A stretch of DNA of 64,000 nt, from positions 548,121 through 612,120 of the forward strand of contig OW569353.1 in assembly GCA_937625935.1 (NCBI GenBank), given 5' to 3'. Position numbers and translations under genes: made by a program. Below the pieces are notes generated by a model. It was not told the origin of the DNA. It searched no databases and saw nothing but the letters and a program-made list of their open reading frames with translations. Positions 51,868 to 63,210 of the stretch are shown here, piece by piece; position 1 is the first letter of the stretch, and each line of letters starts with the position of its first letter. The stretch comes from Tetramitus jugosus. Lineage: Eukaryota > Protista > Heterolobosea.

Positions 51868-54602
51868 ATGAATCAAACGGGGTTGGGTTTCTGTCTAGTC
51901 CCTTGTTCATCATTTTATTATTGCTGTTGTTTCATGTCGTCAATCATGTACGTGCAGAAGTTGAACGAAAAAGAATTGCATCCTCTGTTGTTTACTCGTG
52001 GGATAAACGGGTTGCGACATCTGGAATCACCCTCCTGAAGCAACGCCTACCGATTGGGTCAGTTCATTTTTTCACAAGGTCAATATCACATTGATCTCTG
52101 CAGGACAATCTCACTCTGTTGCAGTTGGCCGACAGGAAGATGAACATGGGGAAGTAATTTATGCATGGGGAAGTTTACAGGGTAATATTGTTACTCAGAT
52201 TGCTGTTGGATATTTGTACACAGTCATGTTAACGAATGATTCAAAGATTTATAGCTGGGGTTCAAATAGGTTTGGCCAATTGGGTAGCGGTTCTTATCAA
52301 GATGAACTGGTACCAGTTGCAGTTAAAATGAGTGGTGAGTTATCTGAAAAAACTGCGGTGCAAATTGCAGCTGGAGGATATCACACGGGACGAGGAATTC
52401 AAAAATTTTTCCCGTGATGGTTGACAAAAGTGGAAATTTGAATGAAAAGATCAATACACAAGTCACGTTAGGTTCCCTCTTTGTATTAGCAAGGTCTGAG
52501 GATGGAATGCTGTATTCATGGGGATCGAATACATACGGACAGATTGGTGATGGTTCATATCAAACGAGACGTCAACCTGTGGCTGTTTTCATGGATGGTG
52601 TGTTGAGCGGTAAGACAATTACAACAGGTTCTGCAGGAAGGTTTCATGTTGTCGCTCTTGCAAATGATACCATGATGTACGCTTGGGGATTAAATATTGG
52701 GGGTAGATTGGGAGATGGATCGGCGATAAATCGTAAGAAGCCTGTTTCAGTTGTCATGAAGGGAGATTTGAAGAGAAAGAGAGTAGTACAAATTGCAACA
52801 GGTGATGTTCACACAGTCGCATTGACGAGTGATGGGACACTCTTTTCTTGGGGCTTCAACAGGTGTGGTATGAATGGGAATGAAACCCTAAGACCTGATG
52901 CTGTGAGCATGGGTGGAACATTGAAAGACAAAAATATTACATTTATTACGGCAGGAGAATATCACACAACGATTTTAACAAGAGATGGTCATATTTATTC
53001 TTGGGGTTTGACAGATTATGGTGCTCCTTTCTCCGTTGACGATGTACCTGTCCGAGTGAGTATGAATGGGTTGTTAAACGAAGAGACCGTATCTCAATTT
53101 ATCGTGAATGATTTTGATATGCTTGCTTTGACCAATGGTGGAAAGTTAGGTTATTGGAATATGCAGAGTAACTATTCCACGTGGGTCAACATGAAAAATG
53201 TTGATTCTGAACAAACCTTAACTAGCTTTTTCATTGGTGCAAATACAATGGGATTCCTTGGAGTCATATGTGAGCAAGGGTATTTTGGTAAAGAGTGTAA
53301 TCTTTTCAACTGCTATGACATAGAACGCGAGGATGAAACAAGGGTCTGCTCTGGAAATGGAGTGTGTGTTGATTTCAATAAGTGTGAATGCAATGAAGGA
53401 TTCACCGGACTGAATTGTTCCTATCCTATTTGTCATGGATACTCAAGCGTAGACACAAAAGTTTGTTCATCACATGGAACCTGTCGAAGTCCCAATAAGT
53501 GTTTTTGTGAACATGGATATCATGGTGACACATGCGCCTCTAATCTGAAACTCCTATGGATATTAGTGATCTTTGGAGTGCTTTTGGGTGTGTCTCTTGT
53601 TGTTTCCACTATTGTGATTGGAGTATTGATCAGAAGAAGAAGAAGAGATGAAAGAGTGAAATCAGAATTGCGTGCATGTTTATTGGAGTAGATGAGCGAT
53701 TATGAAGTTACTTCATTTGAAAGAGGAAATATTTTCATTGATATGAGAGATATTAAATTGATCAGTTGTATCTCGGAAGGAGCATTTGGTGTTGTATTCA
53801 AAGGAGAGTGAAAAAGTAACGCCGTGGCTGTGAAAAAGATGAAAGTATCGGATGATGAATCTTTTGTCAAAGAAGTTTCAATTCTTCAGAGGTTGCGTCA
53901 TCCAAACATTCTCTACTTATATGGATATTCTTCTAATGATAATGGAGACATATTTTTGATAACGGAATTCGCTGTGAATGGGAGTTTGGACAAAGTGTTT
54001 CATTCAAGCAATGTCACTCTCAAACCTTTTGATCAGAAGATGAATATCTTATGTCAGATTGCAGATACAATGGCTTATTTGCATGAAGTCCTCGAATTGT
54101 TCACAGAGACTTGAAGCCACAGAATATTTTGTTGGATGAGAATTATCATGTCAGAATATGTGACTTTGGTTTGAGTAAGAGCACCGATACTTCTTTTACA
54201 ATCGGGAGATCCTATGGAACAATTGAGTACTGTGCTCCAGAACTTTTGGCACATGATGAAACGTGTGACACTTACAGTTTTGGAATTATTATGCATGAAA
54301 TTTTTATCTTGGATACTCCCTATTCCCAGCATTCATACTCATCAGTATTTACGCTTGGATTGGATATTGTGAGAGGATTGAGACCACATATACCATCCAA
54401 TGACTCTCAAGCGCTTTTGGACTTCTTCTCAAAGAGTAACACAACGAACATGCCTTCGTCCGACATTCCTTGCGTTGTGCAAGATTTTTACTCCATTGCC
54501 ACACGGTGCTGGAGTGAAGATGCAACCAAGCGTCCATCATTTGAAGAAATAACAACAGAATTGGACAAAATAAAGAGGAGGAGCGAAAACAATAAAAGGT
54601 GA
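51868..54602 (+). pseudogene. Disrupted receptor-type kinase: signal peptide + RCC1 repeats + EGF-like repeats + TM + TKL-type kinase
   Basis: Split over several ORFs. In-frame TAG (53689) and TGA (about 53809, at the W of FKGEW..VAVK), a frameshift just before HRDLKPQN, and frameshifts near 52090 and 52415. Confidence 0.85.
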
Positions 54603-54624: not shown

Positions 54625-54970
54625 TCGGGAGGTTGGGGTTTATGTCATAAGTCGAGACCCAACCCGAAGAAATTTTTCAGTACAACTTTTAATCATCTCA
54701 ACGAGCTCTACAGGATTAAAACTCGAAGAGAAGATCGCTTCCTACTGTAATTAACAGATTTTCTCTGCAACAGGATTAAAACTGCAACAGACTTTTATGA
54801 AAGATTTTTTCAGATTAACATTGGACTGTATGTTAAGAGAACTGTTCTTTTTTCAAATTTTAGACTAGAATTTTAGACCTCTTATATTCATTTGAAGCAT
54901 TAAGTCTGTTATTTCTGTCATTTTTTGTTGTTTTTTGGCAGATTGAGTTGCATTTCAGTTCAATGGATTT
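54625..54970. repeat. Subtelomeric unit, partial copy 1
   Basis: Diverged direct repeat of 55488-55860 (TATGTCATAAGTC.AGACCCAACCC, TTTTTCAGTACAACTTTTA, CAGGATTAAAACTGCAACAGAC); starts at a degenerate telomere tract. Confidence 0.85.
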
Positions 54971-55487
54971 GTGTGTATTTTGCTTTTATAAACGTTAGGG
55001 TTCGATCCCTTGATCAAATTGTATTTAAAACTTGTGCTTAAAATAATCCAGAAGTGTGGGAGGTTTTTTCTGGTGGAGCTTAAAAGCTCCACCCAACCGA
55101 TCGTGATGAGTTCGAATCCTCAAGCGGGTAAATCCGTATAAACTAAATCCGTAGAAGAAAGGAGGTGGCAAAGGAAGGCAAGGATCTCTTCCAATTGGTG
55201 AAAGGAAGAGAAGCTCAAGGCACCGACTGGTGAAAGGCTGACGAACTCCTACTCAAGCTCACAAGCCTACAACAACAAGATGACAGTTTCTCAAATGGCA
55301 TCCATCTTGGCAGCACTTCTTGCCAGAAATGGTGCTTTTACCTCATTCTGTATTCATCACTGTTTGATGAAACAATCAGAAACAAAATTTCGGGTGGGTT
55401 TGGGTTTGGGACTTTATATTCGTTTCTGAACCGACAAAATATTGCCTTTTATGGAAGGGGAGTGTCTAAATATGGTTTTGGGAGGTT

Positions 55488-56522
55488 TTTGAGTTTGGGT
55501 TTGGGATTTATGTCATAAGTCCAGACCCAACCCAAAGGACTTTTTCAGTACAACTTTTACTCATCTCAACGAGCTCTAACAGGATTTAACAGGATTAAAA
55601 CTCTATCGTCTCGAAGAGACGATCGCTCCCTGCTTTAATTAACAGATTTTAACTGCAACAGGATTAAAACTGCAACAGACTTTAACGACAGATTTTTTCA
55701 TCAAACCATGAGATTAGCACTGGACTGTATGATAAGAGAACAGTTTTTTTTCAGGTTTTAGACTGAAATTTTAGACCTCTTGTATTCATTTAAAGCATTA
55801 AATACGTTATTTCATGTTGTTTTTTCGGCTGATTGAATTGCATTTCAGTACTATGACTTTTGATTCACTTGAAATTCTCTTGACCTGAAGATTTTAACCA
55901 GTTTTAGAGATAATTTGGATACGATGGAGATATTTCGTTGTAGAATGAGATGTTTTCGGTAGAATAGGCTGATGAACGAGAGATTTCATTCTTGAAAGGA
56001 ATATTTTGACATATTGGACAGGCAGAATGAGATTTAAACTTGTCAGTGCATAAGATGAGTGCGGAGTTGCAAGTTCAGATCCAATCTTCATAAAACAAGA
56101 GTAACTCTTGCTTGCTGATAAGAATTCATACCTATGAACGTAAATGACTGTGAAATGTTGCAGAAAACACTATTTTGGAGTGAGATTGGCTCTTGAGAGA
56201 ATATATTTCTATTGTTCTGATTTCCTTGAGTGCAGAGTTGAATACCCAGACCCAACCCATCATAACTGAAGAGAAATAGAAATGACTACTCATTAAAGAT
56301 ATATTGACTCACTAAATTGCCTCCAATCCTTCCAGATTTTGAGCATTGAATGACAGAATTTCTGTTTTCGACAAAGAGTAGGGAGTGAATGTCAAAAGAT
56401 GGATATAGAAATGAACTGAGAGATTTTAGCTTCCATTAATCATGTTTGATCAGATTTTAGATGATAGATCGTTTCTATTTTGAATTTGGATGAAATTTTT
56501 GATTTTTGAGAAAGAAGTTGAC
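55488..56522. repeat. Subtelomeric ~1-kb unit, copy 2
   Basis: Its last ~300 bp are clearly similar to 62920-63210, with weaker collinear similarity upstream; flanked by GGGTTT tracts. Confidence 0.8.
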
Positions 56523-56541
56523 TTGGGTTTGGGTTTGGGTT
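56523..56541 (+). repeat. Short internal telomeric tract (former chromosome end / retroelement 3' junction)
   Basis: TTGGGTTTGGGTTTGGGTT preceded by the same telomere-adjacent sequence as the true telomere at 63211. Confidence 0.85.
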
Positions 56542-56545
56542 CAAA

Positions 56546-56873
56546 CACTCCACTATGGGGCGCGAGAGTGGCGAGTGAGATGTTGTTGTTGTTTGTTAGT
56601 TGTGGTATATTTACGTGCAACACAGGTATTCGGGCTGGTCGCAAATCTAGTGCGGTGCCTAAACATGAGCACTCTACACCACAACTTTATTATTTATACT
56701 AAAAGTGCAGGTCAACTTGGCTGCACAAAAGTCTTGAACCTTGGAAGATTGCAAATGCCCATTGGGCCGATAAAAATGGTCCGTAGGACCATTTTAATTG
56801 GCCGTTGGCGATTTGCACTGTAGTCGGAGCCGTACCCCGTACGGTTTATCCTGACTACGAATCTTATGGTTCA
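56546..56873 (-). ncRNA. Structured 3' UTR of the retroelement (four helical domains)
   Basis: Complementary pairs seen by eye: TGAACC/GGTTCA, AAGATT/AATCTT, AAAATGGTCC/GGACCATTTT, GTAGTC/GACTAC, CCGTAC/GTACGG, GTGCAG/CTGCAC, AGTTGTGGT/ACCACAACT, CACTC/GAGTG. Confidence 0.7.
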
Positions 56874-59800
56874 GTACCACTTGTAGTCCATGCTATCAAG
56901 TTTGCGTTTCTTGATGCGAGGTGCACTCTGCATTAACGTACAACCCTTTGTATCTCTCACTCTCTTAGATACAACGGTTGTATTCACGTTGCAAGAGTCC
57001 CATGTGGACTGTGAAGGAGTTGTTTTGTGTCGTTTGGCCATTGCCGCTTCGACAGCCTCCTTTTCCCTCAAGTACCTCTTATTTTGGGTCTTGGGTGGGT
57101 TTGGGCGCAGGTGCGTTGCTGACTTCGTCAGCATCACGCACCCGCGTGATGTTTTGCGAAGTCGCAATTGCAACTGGCGTCGAATTGTTGAATAACCACT
57201 TCCCCTTTCCGAAAATGATCGGATCAGTCGTTGTGCAGCAAATGAAGTACGCTGCCAACGTCGTTTGTGGTTACCAACAACAACGTCCATCAATGTTCTT
57301 GCCATTTTCTTCTTTTCTTCTTCGTTTGGCATTTGATCACATTGTTGCACCCAAGTGTTGAATTTGGTTTTGCATGCGTGCAGAACTTCCCTAATGTTGG
57401 GAAGTCTGACATTGCAAATGACCAATTCCTTTGGCAAGTCAATCTCATTGAAGAGAGAAATGGCATTTATCAATTGTCGATAATTGATGCCACTGCCAGA
57501 GTGTAACACTTTCCAAATTGGTGGAATTTTTGGTTTGTGTTGCAAGTCCAATTTTTGTTGGTACTTGATCACTCTGGCTTGCCAGTCAATTGATTTGCAG
57601 TATCGTTCAACGAGTGCAAAGTAATTGTTCTTTTTGAACATTCGTTGAACGAAATGGTGGTCATAACCTCTTCGGATTAACCGAGAGGCAAACAATGTTC
57701 GAATTGAATCGAATTGTTTGAAGTGATCAACAAGGCGAGCATATCTTACCAACTCACCTGTGATCAGACCTTTCCTTGCTGCAAATGAAGACGCTGACTT
57801 GTACATGGAGTACATGTACTTGTTCAATGGCTTCTGGTAGACATTGAAGTGAAAGCGCCATAATGGAACTGCAAAGTTCTCATAATACTTTTCCAATTGG
57901 ATGTGCAAATCCAGGAAAACATTATTGTCTGCTTTGCAGAGTTTCAAATCCGAACCATTGTACATGTTGACAATGGTAGGTATGCACTCTTTTGTGCAAG
58001 CAATGAACAAATCGTCAATGTACCTCACTGCAATGCAGTGGGATCTGTTGACTTTGGTCAAGTGTTGCAACTCATAAGCAAGTAGCACAAGGTTGGCTAA
58101 TTCAGGCGCACAATTTGTGCCCATTGGAAGGCCAATTACTTGTTTAAAAATGCTATTGTTGAGTTCCTCACATCTAATGTATGTGCAGGTTAACACAAAA
58201 TGCAATAACAATTTCATTGCACCAATTTCTTGACTTGTCCAAGTGTTTGGTTCAAGTTGTTGCATCATTTCAAAGATGTACTCCATATTTGTTTTGATGA
58301 CGTCATGTCTCAAATTGGTGTACAATGCAGTGAAATCATAGCTGTAGGTTTGCAGCTTTGGATGTACTGTGAATTCCCACGTTGCTCCATTCTGCAAGCA
58401 CCATTTGTTGAGAACCAGTTTCGCTTCATATGAAGATGAAACAATGGGCATTACTGGTAGTAAACCCTGGTCTCGTCTTTGCTGTAGTTGAGTGATCATT
58501 AGACGGAGTCTAATGCTGAGCAGTTTGGATGCTTCAGTGTTGACCCAACTATGGCTGGCGACAATTGGTCGACCTTGGAGTTTGTCTTTGTGCACTTTTG
58601 GCAACAAATAAAACTTGGGAATGGACAATTCATTGATATCCTCAATTTGTCTTGTTTTCCGTAGGTGTTCACCCATAGATGGGTGCAAATTTGAGATCTT
58701 ATCAATGCACCAGTGTGTGAGAATCTTGATTGTTGAGACTGTGTATCTTTTGTTCTCTCTTATGCTGTACACTGGGCTTTCAAGTTGTTTCTTACATTCT
58801 TCAATGTAATTGTCTTTGTGCCAGACAGCGGTGCCCAAGTTCTTGTCTGTGTCACAAATGATCCATTCTTCATTTGTGACGAGTCTCAATAGGGCCTCAT
58901 TGTCAATGCCGTTCAGGTTTTGAACAATTGGAGCATTGTGTCTTTTTCTCCATGCTTCTTGGATCAGAGCACGAGCCGACGAATGGAGGATGTCATTGCT
59001 GACGTCAAGTTTCTTTGTTAATTGCAAAAATGATGAAAAGTCAAGTTCTTGCATGATAAAAGGGTTAATTTTCATTGATGGAATGAACTTTAGGCCTTTG
59101 TTCAACACTTGTACATCTTTAGTCTTGATAGCAGTTGGTGTGAGGTTGAAAATGATGTTTGAACTTGCAGGAACATTGCTGTTGTGCGGTTCAATGGTTT
59201 CTCCCTCCAGCAAGCACTCTTGACGCGTGACGTTGTTTTTCTTCCTTGTTGTGCTGTTGGATGCTTGATATCTTGAAGAACCAGGCCGTGGGAGTTCATA
59301 ATGAAACTCCTTGTGTTTTGGTTCCTGTTGTATGCAGGAAACCATCCTTGTTCTGACAGGTGCGGAGTTTCTTGAAAAACTCCGATTGATCAAACAACCG
59401 TCCAAATGGTGATTTGGATGTCTCCTTGGCATCCTGGTGGATGGACAGCTCATGGATTGCTGATTTGGCTTGGAATCGGTGAAAAATTGGGCATGGATTC
59501 CCCTTTCTTTTGGACCGATTTTTTTCCTCTGCTCTTGGTGGGTTGGTTGGTTTTTTTTGGCTTGTGTTTTTTCCTGTTGTACTTTTTGACGGTCTTCCCT
59601 CATTGATAGAGACCTATTGAAGCTTTCTTTTGGAAAACTGACCACGCCATTGTGTTCCTTGAGGTCACTTGTAGGTGCATGGAGGTTTCTTTTGTTCATC
59701 AAGTGTGTGCTTGTGTTTATCAATTTTGACCTTCGTCCCTCATTCCACAGGGATGTAGGAGAAATATCTTTTGATGCTAATCGCACTGTTTTAGGTTCTA

Positions 59801-60569
59801 TCCATGTAGTACTTGATGATGTATCTGTTGTCTTTCTAGTAGATCCTCTAGTGCTTTGACTGTAGTCAATTTCTAGTTTTCTCCGATATGTTTGAGTCAA
59901 CAGCTCATTCAAAATAAATCGAAATTGCGTGTTCAATGCGCCATTAGATTCAGAAGGTACGAAAGCACCTAGAATGTGTGTAAATGGCATTAATGACTTC
60001 ATTCCTTGTGTGCTGTTTCGATTGGGAAATGAAAAACTCCGATCGAGAATACAACCAATGAGGAAGTTATTTTCATGATTTTTCTTGTCATTATTAGTTA
60101 TATACTGTTTAGTAGAACACCTTTCCAGTTGGAATGACGGTTTTACCTGATGTCCTTGATGGATGGTGATCCATGATAGATTTTTTTGAGTTCCAGGACT
60201 CAACCATTCATTCAAAACATGAATTTTCTTCATTTTGTTTTGAGTTTTCATTATATCATGGTGATAAGTATTGTTAACAGTGGAATAACGAGATTTGTCT
60301 TTGTAATTCCTATCTTTCATTTGTTCGTTAAAATGACAGTCAATTAAATGTCTCAGGCCAAAAAAAAGGTTTTTTTTGGGCCTAACATTTGTGTTCGAAT
60401 GAAATTTTTCAAGGGGATTTCTTTGCGCTTGTTGTAAGCGTTGCTCCTTCACCTTGGCAGACCTGTATTCAAATTGGTTCTGGAGACCAATAACCACCAC
60501 AGGTTGGTGGTGTTTGATGGGAACGAGATGGGAATAGTGGGCAATGGAGCAAATTTTGTCCCATTTCAC
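56871..60569 (-). CDS. Retroelement ORF2: Penelope-like reverse transcriptase (frame open up to 60692; no ATG at its 5' end)
   Basis: VLNKGLKFIP, DTDKNLG, PKFYLLPKVHK...RPIVAS, SYDFTALYTNL, QVIGLPMGTNCAPELANL, RYIDDLF, FLDLHI, VYQKP; basic C-terminus (PRIKKRKL). Confidence 0.92.
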   Translation of the reverse strand: MKWDKICSIAHYSHLVPIKHHQPVVVIGLQNQFEYRSAKVKEQRLQQAQRNPLEKFHSNTNVRPKKNLFFGLRHLIDCHFNEQMKDRNYKDKSRYSTVNNTYHHDIMKTQNKMKKIHVLNEWLSPGTQKNLSWITIHQGHQVKPSFQLERCSTKQYITNNDKKNHENNFLIGCILDRSFSFPNRNSTQGMKSLMPFTHILGAFVPSESNGALNTQFRFILNELLTQTYRRKLEIDYSQSTRGSTRKTTDTSSSTTWIEPKTVRLASKDISPTSLWNEGRRSKLINTSTHLMNKRNLHAPTSDLKEHNGVVSFPKESFNRSLSMREDRQKVQQEKTQAKKNQPTHQEQRKKIGPKERGIHAQFFTDSKPNQQSMSCPSTRMPRRHPNHHLDGCLINRSFSRNSAPVRTRMVSCIQQEPKHKEFHYELPRPGSSRYQASNSTTRKKNNVTRQECLLEGETIEPHNSNVPASSNIIFNLTPTAIKTKDVQVLNKGLKFIPSMKINPFIMQELDFSSFLQLTKKLDVSNDILHSSARALIQEAWRKRHNAPIVQNLNGIDNEALLRLVTNEEWIICDTDKNLGTAVWHKDNYIEECKKQLESPVYSIRENKRYTVSTIKILTHWCIDKISNLHPSMGEHLRKTRQIEDINELSIPKFYLLPKVHKDKLQGRPIVASHSWVNTEASKLLSIRLRLMITQLQQRRDQGLLPVMPIVSSSYEAKLVLNKWCLQNGATWEFTVHPKLQTYSYDFTALYTNLRHDVIKTNMEYIFEMMQQLEPNTWTSQEIGAMKLLLHFVLTCTYIRCEELNNSIFKQVIGLPMGTNCAPELANLVLLAYELQHLTKVNRSHCIAVRYIDDLFIACTKECIPTIVNMYNGSDLKLCKADNNVFLDLHIQLEKYYENFAVPLWRFHFNVYQKPLNKYMYSMYKSASSFAARKGLITGELVRYARLVDHFKQFDSIRTLFASRLIRRGYDHHFVQRMFKKNNYFALVERYCKSIDWQARVIKYQQKLDLQHKPKIPPIWKVLHSGSGINYRQLINAISLFNEIDLPKELVICNVRLPNIREVLHACKTKFNTWVQQCDQMPNEEEKKKMARTLMDVVVGNHKRRWQRTSFAAQRLIRSFSERGSGYSTIRRQLQLRLRKTSRGCVMLTKSATHLRPNPPKTQNKRYLREKEAVEAAMAKRHKTTPSQSTWDSCNVNTTVVSKRVRDTKGCTLMQSAPRIKKRKLDSMDYKWY

Positions 60570-60598
60570 CTTCTTCGTTCCTTTTTGTGTAGAATCAT

Positions 60599-61528
60599 TT
60601 AGTTCCTTTGTTTTGACCCTCGTCTTGACTTTCCTCGTGGTCTGCGAGGGGAGGATGGTTTGCGAGAGGGTTTTTGTTCTTTTTTTCGACCCCTACTGTT
60701 GCTAGGTGATCTTCTGGTCTTAGAGCGACCTCTTTTGGGAGATTTGGATCTCGGTTGGTTCTTTTGTTGTTTTCCTTTCGAAGGAGAACGACTATATGCT
60801 CTTTGGGTCTTTGAACGACCGCGAGATTTAGAACGATTTGAGCGAGCACGAGGTTTGGAATTGTCACGTCTTGGTCGTGATTTGGACCTTGCTCTTGATT
60901 GTTTACCAGCTTGAGCACTAATGCTGATTCTCCAATATGGAGCAGGTTTTGCTGGTACTTGGTTTTCTCCTTCATCGCTCATTGCGTTTTGTTGCTGTTG
61001 GAGAGCAATAATTCTTGTATGTTCTCTTTTTTCCTCTTGTCGTTTTTTGAGTCTTGTGTTCAATTTGTAAGACTGTACTTGAGTGTTCATCTTATTGATG
61101 TACTTGTCAACAGTGGTAACAAATGGACCTGTTCTATGCAATTGTAGTTCTTGTGTAGCTTCAGCAAGTGGTGCATCAGTATTTTTTGTCATTTGGTTCT
61201 TGCAATTGTTAATGAGGTCAGCGACATGTTCTTCAGCAGTCTTGATATATGCATTGGTCAATTGTGTAATGCTGTGATTGAATTTTTCAGACATTTCTTT
61301 ATCAGTAGAGACTGTGGCAGTGGAAGCAATGGTGAGCCATAAGTGTTCTAGCCTTCCTTGGAGGATGGCTGTCAGTTGCATGTTATTTTGCAAGTATTGT
61401 TGTTGCTTCTTCTCGGCAGTGATGGCTTTGCCAATGTTTGTCTTATACTTGTTGATGGCAGATGAGATAATCTTTTCCAGAATAGGATTATTCATTGCTA
61501 CAAGTGACTCTGCTGATGATTGACTCAT
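60599..61528 (-). CDS. Retroelement ORF1: helical/coiled-coil N-terminus plus Arg/Ser/Lys-rich basic tail (309 aa)
   Basis: First ATG at 61528; about 100-aa tail of RSKSR/RSPSK repeats; lies directly 5' of and overlaps the RT frame. Confidence 0.8.
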   Translation of the reverse strand: MSQSSAESLVAMNNPILEKIISSAINKYKTNIGKAITAEKKQQQYLQNNMQLTAILQGRLEHLWLTIASTATVSTDKEMSEKFNHSITQLTNAYIKTAEEHVADLINNCKNQMTKNTDAPLAEATQELQLHRTGPFVTTVDKYINKMNTQVQSYKLNTRLKKRQEEKREHTRIIALQQQQNAMSDEGENQVPAKPAPYWRISISAQAGKQSRARSKSRPRRDNSKPRARSNRSKSRGRSKTQRAYSRSPSKGKQQKNQPRSKSPKRGRSKTRRSPSNSRGRKKEQKPSRKPSSPRRPRGKSRRGSKQRN

Positions 61529-61574
61529 GGTTTGTGAGGAGTTAATGATATTAGTAATGTAAACCACTCAAATA

Positions 61575-62148
61575 GGTTTGGGTTCAAACACTCCACTATG
61601 GGGCGCGAGAGTGGCGAGTGAGATGTTGTTGTTGTTTGTTAGTTGTGGTATATTTACGTGCAACACAGGTATTCGGGCTGGTCGCAAATCTAGTGCGGTG
61701 CCTAAACATGAGCACTCTACACCACAACTTTATTATTTATACTAAAAGTGCAGGTCAACTTGGCTGCACAAAAGTCTTGAACCTTGGAAGATTGCAAATG
61801 CCCATTGGGCCGATAAAAATGGTCCGTAGGACCATTTTAATTGGCCGTTGGCGATTTGCACTGTAGTCGGAGCCGTACCCCGTACGGTTTATCCTGACTA
61901 CGAATCTTATGGTTCAGTACCACTTGTAGTCCATGCTATCAAGTTTGCGTTTCTTGATGCGAGGTGCACTCTGCATTAACGTACAACCCTTTGTATCTCT
62001 CACTCTCTTAGATACAACGGTTGTATTCACGTTGCAAGAGTCCCATGTGGACTGTGAAGGAGTTGTTTTGTGTCGTTTGGCCATTGCCGCTTCGACAGCC
62101 TCCTTTTCCCTCAAGTACCTCTTATTTTGGGTCTTGGGTGGGTTTGGG
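61575..62148 (-). mobile_element. 5'-truncated second copy of the element (pseudo-LTR), 574 bp, direct repeat of 56532-57105
   Basis: No mismatches seen by eye at a constant offset of 5,043 bp; includes the 3' UTR and the end of ORF2. Confidence 0.93.
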
Positions 62149-62220
62149 TTTGGGTTTGGGTTTGGGTTTGGGTTTGGGTTTGGGTTTGGGTTTGGGTTTG
62201 GGTTGGGTTTGGGTTTGGGG
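62140..62220 (+). repeat. Internal telomeric tract capping the truncated element copy
   Basis: About 13 GGGTTT units starting exactly where homology to the full copy ends. Confidence 0.93.
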
Positions 62221-63210
62221 ATACATCCTGGATTCCCCAACCTAAGGAAACGATTTCCTTATATGGTAATTTTTTTTTTGAGATTTTTTATTGCTCTAAG
62301 AGCTTCAGCTGGTTGAGACGAAGAGATTGGCATTGTTTTCAACTCGATTTGAGCTTTATCGGCTCGTAGAGCCGATATATCTGTGCTGTATTTGACATAT
62401 TTTTATCGGCAACAGTGTTAAAACTGCAACAGATTTCAGTCGATTTTGATCCTGTACTGGAGTTAAGACATTCGATTGAGACTTGATTTCTTTAGTTTGG
62501 ATCAGGATATTGAGACAGTATTTGATCATTTTTAACATGATTTTCTTCCAACTATAGTTTTTGCCTCAGTTTTTGAGTACCTGATTTTTCAGAATTTTTG
62601 ACAGACTTGATTTAGTGTTTTTCTGGAGAGAATAGACAGATTTTATTAAATAATCACTGTAGAATCAGATGTTTTATCTAGTAATGAGACTTTTCTACGT
62701 AAAATCCTGTAAGACAGTGAAATATTGAAGTTTCAAATTTGAATCGAGTTTATAGTTGAAACGCCAAACTCAACCCGTCAGAAATCCAGAGTACTAGCTT
62801 TTTCTGAATGAAAATTCATATTTATGAATGTGATAGACTGAGAGTCTTGGAAAAAATTCTTCTTCTGAGATAGATCGGCTCTGACCGAATGAGGGCTCGG
62901 ATTTTGTCGTTTTCGTGCATGCAGAGTTGAATACCCAGACCCAACCCGACATAACTGAAGAGAAAAAGGAATGATTACTCATAAAACGTATATTTACTCC
63001 CTAACTTGCCTCAAATTCTTCCAGATGTTGAGCATTGGACGAGAGAATTTCTGTTTTCGACAAAGAGTAAGGAGTGAATGTCAAGAGATGGATATAGAAA
63101 TGGACTGAGTGATTTGAACTTTCATTAATCTTGTTTGATCAGATTTTAGATGGCAGATCGATTCTATTTTGAATTTGGATGAAGTTTTTGATTTTTGAGA
63201 AGAAAGTTGA
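62221..63210. repeat. Subtelomeric ~1-kb unit, copy 3 (telomere-adjacent)
   Basis: Shares AAAACTGCAACAGA, TGTAGAAT.AGATGTTTT, GCAGAGTTGAATACCCAGACCCAACCC and the final ~300 bp with 55488-56522. Confidence 0.8.

What the first reader, a model, noticed from the sequence alone, without database searches (positions are those of the whole stretch)
56532..62220. Intact telomere-extending, endonuclease-less Penelope-like retroelement in a (TTTGGG)n protist
Seen: a 5,043-bp minus-strand unit with ORF1 and an uninterrupted RT ORF carrying PLE signatures (DKN, PKVHK..RPIV, DFTALYTN, GLPMG, YIDD, FLDL, VYQKP). There is no recognisable GIY-YIG, APE, RLE, integrase or RNase H domain, and no target-site duplication or poly(A) tail. 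The 3' end is fused to telomeric repeats and the 5' end points to the chromosome end. Known: PLE RTs are the closest relatives of telomerase RT, and endonuclease-negative PLEs (Athena of bdelloids, Coprina of fungi) attach to chromosome ends by priming on the exposed G-strand. Inference: this is a recently active element that extends eroded chromosome ends and may back up telomerase, possibly a new clade in a lineage where such elements are not described.
Basis: partly seen in the sequence, partly recalled or inferred. Interest (0 to 1): 0.95.

Follow-up and report, generated by a model that had tools for sequence, protein, structure and literature searches.

The report
Telomere-attached endonuclease-less Penelope-like retroelement
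This is a young, apparently still mobile retroelement of a heterolobosean amoeba that copies itself onto chromosome ends instead of cutting into DNA; this lifestyle has been known in rotifers and fungi since 2007, but I found no report of it in this lineage, and this element lacks the usual ribozyme.

Summary
Window 56540-61574 (minus strand) is a 5,035-nt retroelement. It has ORF1, a -1 frame overlap with an A7 slippery site, and an uninterrupted 1,232-codon ORF2.

ORF2 residues 480-1100 fold confidently as a reverse transcriptase, and telomerase is the best structural match. No nuclease was detected.

The element's 3' end always reads ...GTGTTTGAA followed by in-phase (CCCAAA)n. Its 5' end faces the chromosome tip. 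All six young copies (at least 99.5% identical) sit at four chromosome ends in one polarity. The five partial ones are 5'-truncated and capped by telomere repeats. Other strains and metagenomes show further head-to-tail joints.

This is the known Athena/Coprina lifestyle. The host is a heterolobosean (Naegleria-type TTTGGG telomere), and I found no report of such elements there.

Differences from the described clades:
- no hammerhead, although the same test finds one in relatives;
- a roughly 480-aa unassigned N-terminal extension;
- a conserved C-terminal tail;
- a telomere-like internal seed where 565-nt copies end.

It forms a small clade of its own with three relatives that also abut CCCAAA-type tracts. 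"Backs up telomerase" is unsupported: TERT is intact and only 4 ends carry young copies. The scan noted a similar element on another piece of this genome (s1-537737).

The parts
56523..56539 (+). 17-nt telomeric tract (TTGGGTTTGGGTTTGGG) between the subtelomeric unit and the 3' end of the full-length copy
56540..61574 (-). full-length element (5,035 nt), the only full-length copy in the genome
56540..56870 (-). 3' UTR. It is strongly structured (z = -5.9), has no hammerhead, and ends in a hairpin followed by UGUUUGAA just before the telomere-complementary tail. A hairpin with a GGG(G) loop just after the stop codon is kept, with compensatory changes, in two relatives.
56871..60569 (-). ORF2, 1,232 codons plus stop; the frame is open from 60692 and lies in the -1 frame relative to ORF1
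57270..59132 (-). ORF2 residues 480-1100: PLE N-terminal motifs, RT fingers/palm and thumb. It retains every residue that is invariant across the 69-sequence alignment. AF2 predicts it with high confidence, and the best structural matches are telomerases.
56874..57269 (-). ORF2 C-terminal 132 aa: basic (pI 11.4), not confidently folded, but conserved in relatives (FAAQRLI ... SMDYKWY-stop). No nuclease motif.
59133..60569 (-). ORF2 N-terminal ~480 aa: open frame with no detectable family, fold or homologue outside this genome
60680..60686 (-). A AAA AAA slippery heptamer, in phase, at the start of the 94-nt ORF1/ORF2 overlap: candidate -1 frameshift site
60599..61528 (-). ORF1 (309 aa from ATG). 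The last 109 aa are 61% Arg/Ser/Lys (pI 12). It is unique in the genome.
57082..57146 (-). telomere-like seed (CCCAAACCCACCCAAGACCCAAAA, 57082-57105) just 3' of a strong RNA hairpin (57106-57146, z = -5.1); the point where the 565-nt copies end and telomere repeats begin
61575..61582 (+). 8-nt telomeric filler (GGTTTGGG) joining the 5' end of the full copy to the 3' end of the next copy
61583..62148 (-). second copy, 5'-truncated (the 3'-terminal 565 nt, 100% identical), head-to-tail with the first; pLTR-like
62126..62219 (+). (TTTGGG)16 cap on the truncated copy
62221..63210 (.). ~990-bp subtelomeric unit. It is found next to the telomere at most chromosome ends in one polarity, and here it is 100% identical to the C7 end.
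63211..64000 (+). terminal (TTTGGG)n telomere, running to the end of the window

Best explanation
This is an autonomous Penelope-like retroelement without an endonuclease. It multiplies by reverse-transcribing its RNA directly onto chromosome ends.

Shown:
- It has two ORFs. ORF2 lies in the -1 frame, with an in-phase slippery heptamer in the overlap, so a frameshift fusion is likely.
- The RT keeps every residue that is invariant across a 69-sequence PLE alignment.
- Every copy has the same 3' terminus, followed by telomere-complementary repeats in a fixed phase.
- All young copies lie on the C-rich strand with their 5' end outward.
- Five of the six young copies are 5'-truncated and capped by telomere repeats, and head-to-tail joints carry only 1-8 nt of telomeric filler.

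Inferred:
- The transcript carries a short (CCCAAA)n tail next to a terminal hairpin.
- This tail pairs with an exposed G-strand 3' end, and the RT extends that end.
- The end used is probably a critically short one, because only 5-17 nt of telomere lie proximal to the inserts.
- Synthesis often stops early. A favoured stop lies at a hairpin beside an internal telomere-like seed, about 565 nt in.
- Telomerase then re-caps the new end.
- Later recombination with other ends adds the common ~990-bp subtelomeric unit distally.
For: Protein:
- RT identity.
- AF2 model with pLDDT 82.8; telomerases are the top Foldseek matches.
- No nuclease found: Pfam (7), disordered C-terminal tail (47), N-terminus without fold or family (68, 74), and none of the genome's three GIY-YIG matches lies on a contig with a young copy (108).

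Copies and junctions:
- Copy map: full length plus 565 nt (C10), 565 plus 2,475 nt (C3), 2,201 nt (C17) and 1,771 nt (C48). All are terminal, all share one polarity, and all are 99.5-100% identical.
- Eight of eight 3' junctions read GAA|CCCAA(A) in the same phase, with tracts of 5-41 nt. Each truncation point is unique and capped by CCCAAA.
- Other runs show further joints (57661, 59015 and 59092 joined to 56523/4) and a depth gradient from 3' to 5'.

Relatives:
- Elements at 59%, 44% and 35% identity in other assemblies also abut CCAAACCC tracts in the same orientation.
- The -1 frame and in-phase slippery heptamers occur in 6 of 6 related elements.
Against: - No RNA data, so neither transcription nor the RNA's 3' end is shown.
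- Only one full-length copy exists, so its 5' end and promoter are undefined.
- In 3 of 4 ends a subtelomeric unit lies distal to the insert. This needs a second step (recombination), or insertion into internal telomere tracts.
- Older fragments are partly inverted (C21, C29, C12) or internal (C50, C7, C37).
- The hammerhead said to accompany the tail in Athena/Coprina is absent.
- 480 aa of ORF2 are unexplained and could hide an unrecognised activity.
Confidence: 0.75

Rival explanations
1. The element is no longer mobile. Its copies spread among chromosome ends by break-induced replication or recombination started in short telomere tracts, followed by erosion and telomerase healing.
For: Subtelomeres here clearly exchange. 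The terminal ~990-bp unit plus telomere of C10 is 100% identical to that of C7. The unit sits at most ends, with 18-24-nt telomere tracts between units. Truncation plus a telomere cap can also arise by erosion and healing.
Against: - Each truncated copy has a unique length and unique distal context, so none is a copy of another.
- Only one full-length copy exists, although this model predicts full-length donors being duplicated.
- Head-to-tail joints with 1-8 nt of filler, at different truncation points in different samples, are hard to produce by erosion.
- The ORFs are intact and the RT keeps its conserved residues.
Confidence: 0.1
2. It is a site-specific inserter. An unrecognised nuclease, either in the 480-aa N-terminal region or supplied in trans, cuts telomeric or interstitial (TTTGGG)n, as the TRAS/SART elements of Bombyx do. 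Insertion would then be into repeats rather than onto free ends.
For: Three of four young inserts lie proximal to a subtelomeric unit, at the position of an interstitial telomere tract. A large part of ORF2 has no assigned function. Some old fragments are inverted.
Against: - No nuclease family, motif or fold was found.
- The N-terminal region is absent from the closest relatives, which show the same telomere association.
- On C3 the copies lie directly under the terminal telomere.
- All six young copies share one polarity. Insertion into duplex repeats by a strand-specific nick could give this too, so this point is weak.
Confidence: 0.1
3. The element is a co-opted back-up for telomere maintenance, rescuing ends that telomerase failed to maintain.
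For: The telomere tracts proximal to the inserts are only 5-17 nt long. This suggests attachment to nearly eroded ends.
Against: - A complete TERT gene is present, with RBD, RT and C-terminal extension.
- The ends examined carry 0.5-0.9 kb of telomere.
- Young copies occupy only 4 ends, and one groundwater run showed no contigs over the 5' 1.8 kb.
- Nothing shows any benefit to the host.
Confidence: 0.05

Closest known systems
Athena (bdelloid rotifers) and Coprina (fungi, diatom, spike moss): endonuclease-deficient, telomere-associated Penelope-like elements (Gladyshev & Arkhipova 2007, as summarised in PMC8557442 and PMC6431247)
   Same: - No endonuclease.
- Two ORFs, with ORF1 separated from the RT by a frameshift.
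- 3' end carrying reverse-complement telomeric repeats.
- Sense strand on the C-rich strand, with the 5' end outward.
- 5' truncations capped by telomere repeats, and head-to-tail arrays.
- PLE RT motifs, including the DKN motif used to define Coprina alignments (PMC13159263).
   Different: - No hammerhead next to the tail; a plain hairpin sits there instead.
- ~480-aa N-terminal extension and a clade-specific conserved C-terminal tail.
- Motif A is YDFTALY and motif B is GLPMG, against xDVxSxY and GxAMG in the fungal sequences.
- In my trees it falls outside the clade holding the named fungal sequences.
- The host is a heterolobosean with TTTGGG telomeres.
Unnamed two-ORF PLEs from metagenomes and SRA assemblies (P0009, P0238, P0239, P0243)
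   Same: These are the nearest group in the trees apart from the Naiad-type sequences and P0051/P0054. They share the ORF1, -1 frame, RT layout with an in-phase slippery heptamer. Three of the four (P0009, P0238, P0239) have CCCTAA-type telomere tracts at or near the element ends.
   Different: Only 30-34% identical. Two of them carry a canonical minimal hammerhead in the 3' UTR. They have no long N-terminal extension, and their hosts are unknown.
Naiad/Chlamys (PLEs with an N-terminal GIY-YIG)
   Same: They group with this clade in ML and FastTree trees. They share DF in motif A and PMG in motif B, and mostly lack hammerheads.
   Different: They have an N-terminal GIY-YIG, a CxC motif, DKA, and an insertion of 20-40 aa between motifs A and B, and they insert genome-wide. 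This element has none of these (its A-to-B spacing is only about 8 aa longer than usual).
HeT-A/TART/TAHRE of Drosophila and the Y' elements of yeast
   Same: Head-to-tail terminal arrays in one polarity. The upstream copy's 3' end may drive the downstream copy, as in HeT-A. Subtelomeric units separated by short telomere tracts resemble Y'.
   Different: Those are non-LTR elements with poly(A) in a telomerase-less host, or non-retroelement repeats. Here telomerase is present and the RT is of the Penelope type.
Telomerase reverse transcriptase (TERT)
   Same: Best structural matches of the folded RT. It extends a G-strand 3' end on an RNA template that carries the telomere complement.
   Different: ORF2 has no telomerase RNA-binding domain. 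It copies its own 5-kb RNA once instead of a short template repeatedly. The genome has a separate, genuine TERT.

Membership tests
Penelope-like elements (RT) | N-terminal conserved motifs with DK(G/N), then PK.HK...RPIV, then RT motifs A, B and C (YIDD) | tested here: met
   Translation. In the alignment with 68 homologues it retains every invariant residue. Motif table.
Penelope-like elements (RT) | RT thumb region (YQKP.NKY ... ; Pfam HTH_animal/DUF8422 on homologues) | tested here: met
   It aligns through this region and the region folds with pLDDT above 90. Homologues carry PF26215/PF28514. These two models were not matched by the local Pfam scan, and PF26215 is not in the local library.
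Penelope-like elements (RT) | Structural and phylogenetic affinity to telomerase RT | tested here: met
   Seven of the ten best Foldseek PDB matches are telomerases, E 7e-8 to 1.5e-6.
Penelope-like elements | Partial tandem copies giving pseudo-LTRs | tested here: met
   A 565-nt 3' fragment lies directly upstream of the full copy, and also upstream of the C3 copy.
Athena/Coprina-type EN-minus telomeric PLEs | No GIY-YIG or other endonuclease domain | tested here: met
   The N-terminal 480 aa gave no fold with a single-sequence AF2 run, so that part of the negative result is weak.
Athena/Coprina-type EN-minus telomeric PLEs | 3' end followed by reverse-complement telomeric repeats; terminal position with the 5' end outward | tested here: met
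   Eight of eight junctions. All six young copies. Older fragments are mixed.
Athena/Coprina-type EN-minus telomeric PLEs | 5' truncations capped by telomere repeats; head-to-tail arrays | tested here: met
Athena/Coprina-type EN-minus telomeric PLEs | Hammerhead ribozyme fold immediately upstream of the telomeric tail | tested here: not met
   A descriptor scan finds the hammerheads of relatives L054 and L055 and a G8A variant in L040. It gives 0 hits on both strands of window 56300-62300. Rfam missed even the positive control, so its blank says nothing.
Athena/Coprina-type EN-minus telomeric PLEs | ORF1 upstream of the RT, separated by a frameshift | tested here: met
   -1 frame, overlap and in-phase slippery heptamer in this element and in 5 of 5 relatives. 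A coiled coil in ORF1 was not tested.
Athena or Coprina clade (phylogenetic) | RT nested within curated Athena or Coprina reference sequences | not testable with these tools
   No curated references could be imported. Against the named fungal sequences (Puccinia, Rhizoctonia, four ascomycetes) it falls outside their clade. The careful tree did not finish.
Naiad/Chlamys | N-terminal GIY-YIG, CxC motif, DKA, insertion between motifs A and B | tested here: not met
   No GIY-YIG. No similarity to the N-termini of P0113 or P0118. It has DKN, and its A-to-B spacing is 68 aa against 83 aa. The RT grouping itself is suggestive only.
Telomere-specific non-LTR elements (HeT-A/TART, SART/TRAS) | LINE-type RT, APE or Gag domains, poly(A) tail | tested here: not met
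   No poly(A) and no APE. The sequence homologues are PLEs.

The most novel reading that the evidence does not exclude
This is a separate lineage of telomere-attaching, endonuclease-less PLEs in Discoba, belonging to neither Athena nor the fungal Coprina type. It has replaced the hammerhead by a hairpin. It also carries a built-in 'early exit': a hairpin plus a telomerase seed, 565 nt from the 3' end. That exit repeatedly produces short solo copies, which telomerase caps and which then serve as the upstream pseudo-LTR. The element attaches preferentially to ends whose telomere has shrunk to a few repeats.
Probability: 0.25. Interest if true: 0.7.

Novelty: new variant of a known kind. Interest (0 to 1): 0.5.

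Why it matters
Terminal, endonuclease-independent retrotransposition by the closest relatives of telomerase has been inferred from sequence but not reconstituted.

This case offers a small genome (26 Mb) assembled into the telomeres. It has a single intact master copy, a handful of dated daughter copies, and a compact 3' module without a ribozyme.

That combination makes the proposed steps directly testable:
- tail pairing with the G-strand;
- extension by the element's RT;
- hand-over to telomerase.

It also extends the known range of such elements to a heterolobosean. This bears on the idea that telomere-attached PLEs are ancient companions of telomerase.

Tried and rejected
- Rfam scans for hammerheads. 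They were blank, but they also missed the clear hammerhead of relative L054, so I discarded them as evidence and used a descriptor scan with positive controls instead.
- PDB sequence search with ORF2: no match.
- N-terminal 480 aa of ORF2. Pfam, the ESM Atlas, BLASTP against relatives and N-terminal-endonuclease PLEs, and single-sequence AF2 (pLDDT 33) all gave nothing. I found no nuclease, but the negative is weak.
- ORF1: no sequence similarity to the ORF1s of related elements. Only the architecture is shared.
- Phylogeny. MAFFT on full-length proteins timed out. The 'careful' IQ-TREE run did not finish in 706 s, and an LG+F+G4 bootstrap run timed out. No AU test was run. I report only the quick ML and FastTree trees.
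- Taxon names for the nearest unnamed homologues: none on record.
- The ~990-bp subtelomeric unit as a non-autonomous partner of the element. It has no sequence similarity to the element and its structure is equally explained by recombination, so this is left open.
- A tyrosine recombinase next to the older inverted fragments on C21 and C29 (a lead from earlier notes). The ORF lists showed no intact element there, I did not scan those ORFs against Pfam, and I did not pursue it.
- RNA evidence: no RNA run holds the element.
- Gladyshev & Arkhipova 2007 is not held in the paper library. Its content is cited through later papers.

Full report
LAYOUT. The window is the right end of a 612-kb contig of a 26.35-Mb, 56-contig genome. 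It ends in about 790 bp of (TTTGGG)n. Reading inward from the tip on the C-rich strand, the order is:
- telomere;
- a ~990-bp subtelomeric unit (62221-63210);
- (CCCAAA)16;
- a 565-nt 3' fragment of the element (61583-62148);
- CCCAAACC;
- the full-length element (61574 down to 56540);
- a 17-nt telomere tract (56523-56539);
- further ~0.9-1-kb subtelomeric units.

CODING CAPACITY.
- ORF1 is 309 aa from its ATG. It ends in a 109-aa tail that is 61% Arg/Ser/Lys.
- ORF2 lies in the -1 frame. Its frame opens 94 nt before the ORF1 stop, and an in-phase A AAA AAA heptamer sits at the start of that overlap.
- The same -1 relation, overlap and an in-phase slippery heptamer (A AAA AAC, C CCC CCT, C CCT TTT) occur in all five related two-ORF elements I could retrieve. 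A -1 frameshift fusion is therefore the likely mode of expression. Craig et al. draw ORF1 as separable by a frameshift with a pseudoknot in their PLE domain scheme (PMC8557442, read).
- The structure downstream of the slippery site in this element is not significant (z = -1.4).
- ORF2 is open for 1,273 codons; chance gives about 5e-35.

THE RT.
- Residues 480-1100 align with PLE reverse transcriptases and retain every residue that is invariant across the 69-sequence alignment.
- With that alignment AF2 gives pLDDT 82.8 and pTM 0.79; residues 1-621 of the 753-residue model are well folded.
- Foldseek against the PDB ranks telomerases first (Tetrahymena, Candida, human), with Tribolium TERT further down the list. 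Viral RdRps are interleaved from rank 4, followed by DRT2, LINE-1, R2 and group II intron RTs.

THE TWO ORF2 EXTENSIONS.
- The last 132 aa are basic and not confidently folded. They are nevertheless conserved in the closest relatives, with an invariant FAAQRLI and a terminal SMDYKWY-stop. I saw no nuclease motif there.
- The first ~480 aa have no Pfam, Atlas or BLAST relative and did not fold. A decayed copy on contig C21 still matches them at 33% amino-acid identity. The region is therefore coding, fast-evolving, and of unknown role.
- The three GIY-YIG matches in the genome lie on C16, C42 and C47, none of which carries a young copy.

COPIES.
- There is one full-length copy and one ORF1 in the whole genome.
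- All other young copies start at the element's 3' end and stop at different points: 2,475 and 565 nt (C3, directly under the telomere), 2,201 nt (C17), 1,771 nt (C48) and 565 nt (this window). They are 99.5-100% identical.
- All six lie at contig ends with the sense strand on the C-rich strand.
- Every 3' junction reads ...GTGTTTGAA followed by CCCAA(A) in the same phase, with tracts of 5-41 nt. Every truncation is capped by CCCAAA-type repeats. The constant phase is what a templated tail predicts; priming at random microhomology would not give it.
- Proximal tracts of only 5-17 nt (5, 8, 17 and 17 nt at the four ends) suggest attachment to almost fully eroded ends. This is an inference.
- Older fragments (70-92% identical) are mixed. 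Six have the expected polarity, four are inverted (C21, C29 twice, C12), and three are internal (C50, C7, C37). The C50 copy still carries a CCCAAACCC tail.

OTHER SAMPLES. Contigs of two runs of the same organism and of groundwater and soil metagenomes cover the element. They show:
- a depth gradient falling from the 3' to the 5' end, which is only a loose measure in contig data;
- no contigs over the 5' 1.8 kb in the groundwater run;
- additional head-to-tail joints, with truncation at 57661/57659, 59015 or 59092 joined to the tail at 56523/4, mostly with 1-5 letters (25 in one case) between;
- the 565-nt end in a third context.
These are independent events, and recombination would not readily produce them.

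THE 565-NT COPIES. They end inside a telomere-like stretch of ORF2 (CCCAAACCCACCCAAGACCCAAAA) that lies just 3' of a strong RNA hairpin (z = -5.1). A cDNA stalled there would end in a good telomerase substrate. Part of the seed is kept in the 59%-identical relative. This explains the recurrence but remains an inference.

THE 3' MODULE.
- The 331-nt 3' UTR is strongly structured (z = -5.9).
- A hairpin with a GGG(G) loop just after the stop codon is kept, with compensatory changes, in two relatives. With only three sequences this is suggestive, not proven.
- There is no hammerhead. A descriptor that finds canonical minimal hammerheads in relatives L054 and L055, and a G8A variant 25 nt before the telomeric tail of the 35%-identical relative, finds nothing on either strand of 56300-62300.
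- Rfam failed on the positive control and is not used as evidence.
- The literature describes the hammerhead beside the tail as characteristic of EN-minus PLEs (PMC8557442, PMC6431247). This is therefore a real difference.

RELATIVES AND PLACEMENT.
- HMMER against 1.84 billion cluster representatives gives 4,303 hits. Only 17 reach E 1e-30 or better. Beyond a few fragments and P0003, identity drops to about 30-36%.
- The three closest full relatives (59% and 44% from one NCBI assembly, 35% from SRA assemblies) are themselves capped by, or end in, CCAAACCC-type tracts in the same orientation.
- In quick ML and FastTree trees these four form a clade (SH-like support 0.98-1.0). That clade sits in a well-supported set with a group of unnamed two-ORF PLEs, most of them next to CCCTAA-type tracts, and with Naiad-type sequences (N-terminal GIY-YIG, DKA, long A-to-B spacing). 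It lies outside the clade holding Puccinia, Rhizoctonia and ascomycete sequences.
- Long branches are involved, the careful search did not finish, and no curated Athena or Coprina references were available. I therefore claim only a distinct family-level lineage of uncertain position.

HOST.
- The genome's TERT is complete, with RBD, RT and C-terminal extension.
- Its best named match by far is Acrasis kona, a heterolobosean.
- TTTGGG was proposed as the telomere repeat of Naegleria gruberi (PMC3622300).
- The element's DNA turns up in groundwater, soil, hot-spring and freshwater metagenomes.
- The host is thus a heterolobosean amoeba, probably Naegleria or a near relative. This is an inference.
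- Full-text searches found no report of PLEs at telomeres in this group.

THE SUBTELOMERIC UNIT. The ~990-bp unit sits next to the telomere at most ends, in one polarity, sometimes in tandem, with 18-24-nt telomere tracts between units. It has no similarity to the element. Its presence distal to three of the four inserts is best explained by later recombination between ends, since the C10 and C7 ends are identical. Insertion of the element into interstitial tracts cannot be excluded.

VERDICT. It is a new variant of a kind known since 2007, not a new kind. The idea that it backs up telomerase has no support. A first-stage note (s1-537737) had already flagged a similar tandem chain on another piece of this genome.

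Noticed in passing
window 62221-63210; also 54633-56520: A ~0.9-1-kb non-coding subtelomeric unit lies next to the telomere at most chromosome ends, always in one polarity. It is sometimes tandem, with 18-24-nt telomere tracts between units (Y'-like). The C10 and C7 ends are 100% identical over the unit. Whether it spreads by recombination or by reverse transcription is open.
   Followed up: partly
window 57082-57146: A strong RNA hairpin (z = -5.1) lies directly 5' of a telomere-like seed inside ORF2. Three independent 565-nt copies (C10, C3 and a groundwater metagenome variant) end here and continue as telomere repeats.
   Followed up: partly
window 60599-60692; L054, L055, L057, L058, L040: ORF2 is in the -1 frame with an in-phase slippery heptamer in the ORF1 overlap in 6 of 6 related elements. 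In two of them A AAA AAC sits immediately before the ORF1 stop codon.
   Followed up: yes
window 56820-56850; L031 2335-2360; L032 2805-2830: A 7-bp hairpin with a GGG(G) loop just downstream of the ORF2 stop is kept, with compensatory changes, in three elements that are 44-59% identical in protein.
   Followed up: partly
L040 3742-3792: The 35%-identical relative has a hammerhead-like fold with G8 changed to A (CUGAAAA ... GAAAC) about 25 nt before its AAACCCAA end. This looks like an intermediate between hammerhead-bearing relatives and this element.
   Followed up: partly
G000 C50:168599-169749 (L045): A degenerate copy (92% identical) lies in the middle of a 329-kb contig. It has an intact 3' end, a CCCAAACCC tail and then ATTTGAGTAG, which resembles the element's 5' end. 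It could be an internalised old end, or an insertion at a break.
   Followed up: partly
G000 C21:501592-502656, C29:475117-477051, C29:3699-3783, C12:583378-583487: Older fragments of the family lie in inverted polarity close to chromosome ends. On C21 the fragment is followed directly by an 18-nt G-strand tract and a subtelomeric unit.
   Followed up: partly
G000 C47:381807-381908: A weak GIY-YIG match (23 bits, partial) lies about 4 kb proximal to the subtelomeric unit (385568-386551) at the far end of C47. No link to the element was seen.
   Followed up: no
window 63230-63375 and 63861-63920: The inner part of the terminal telomere is rich in TTTTGG variant repeats. A short irregular G-rich block (GGGGT/GGGGTT runs) interrupts the array near the tip, possibly a read-error artefact.
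   Followed up: no
G000 C31:283132-286356 (L034 2633-5857): A single-exon, 1,074-aa TERT with RBD, RT and C-terminal extension. Its best named relative is Acrasis kona TERT (35% identity).
   Followed up: yes
window 53824-54602: A split protein-kinase gene (TKL-like) is the last recognisable host gene before the subtelomeric units.
   Followed up: no
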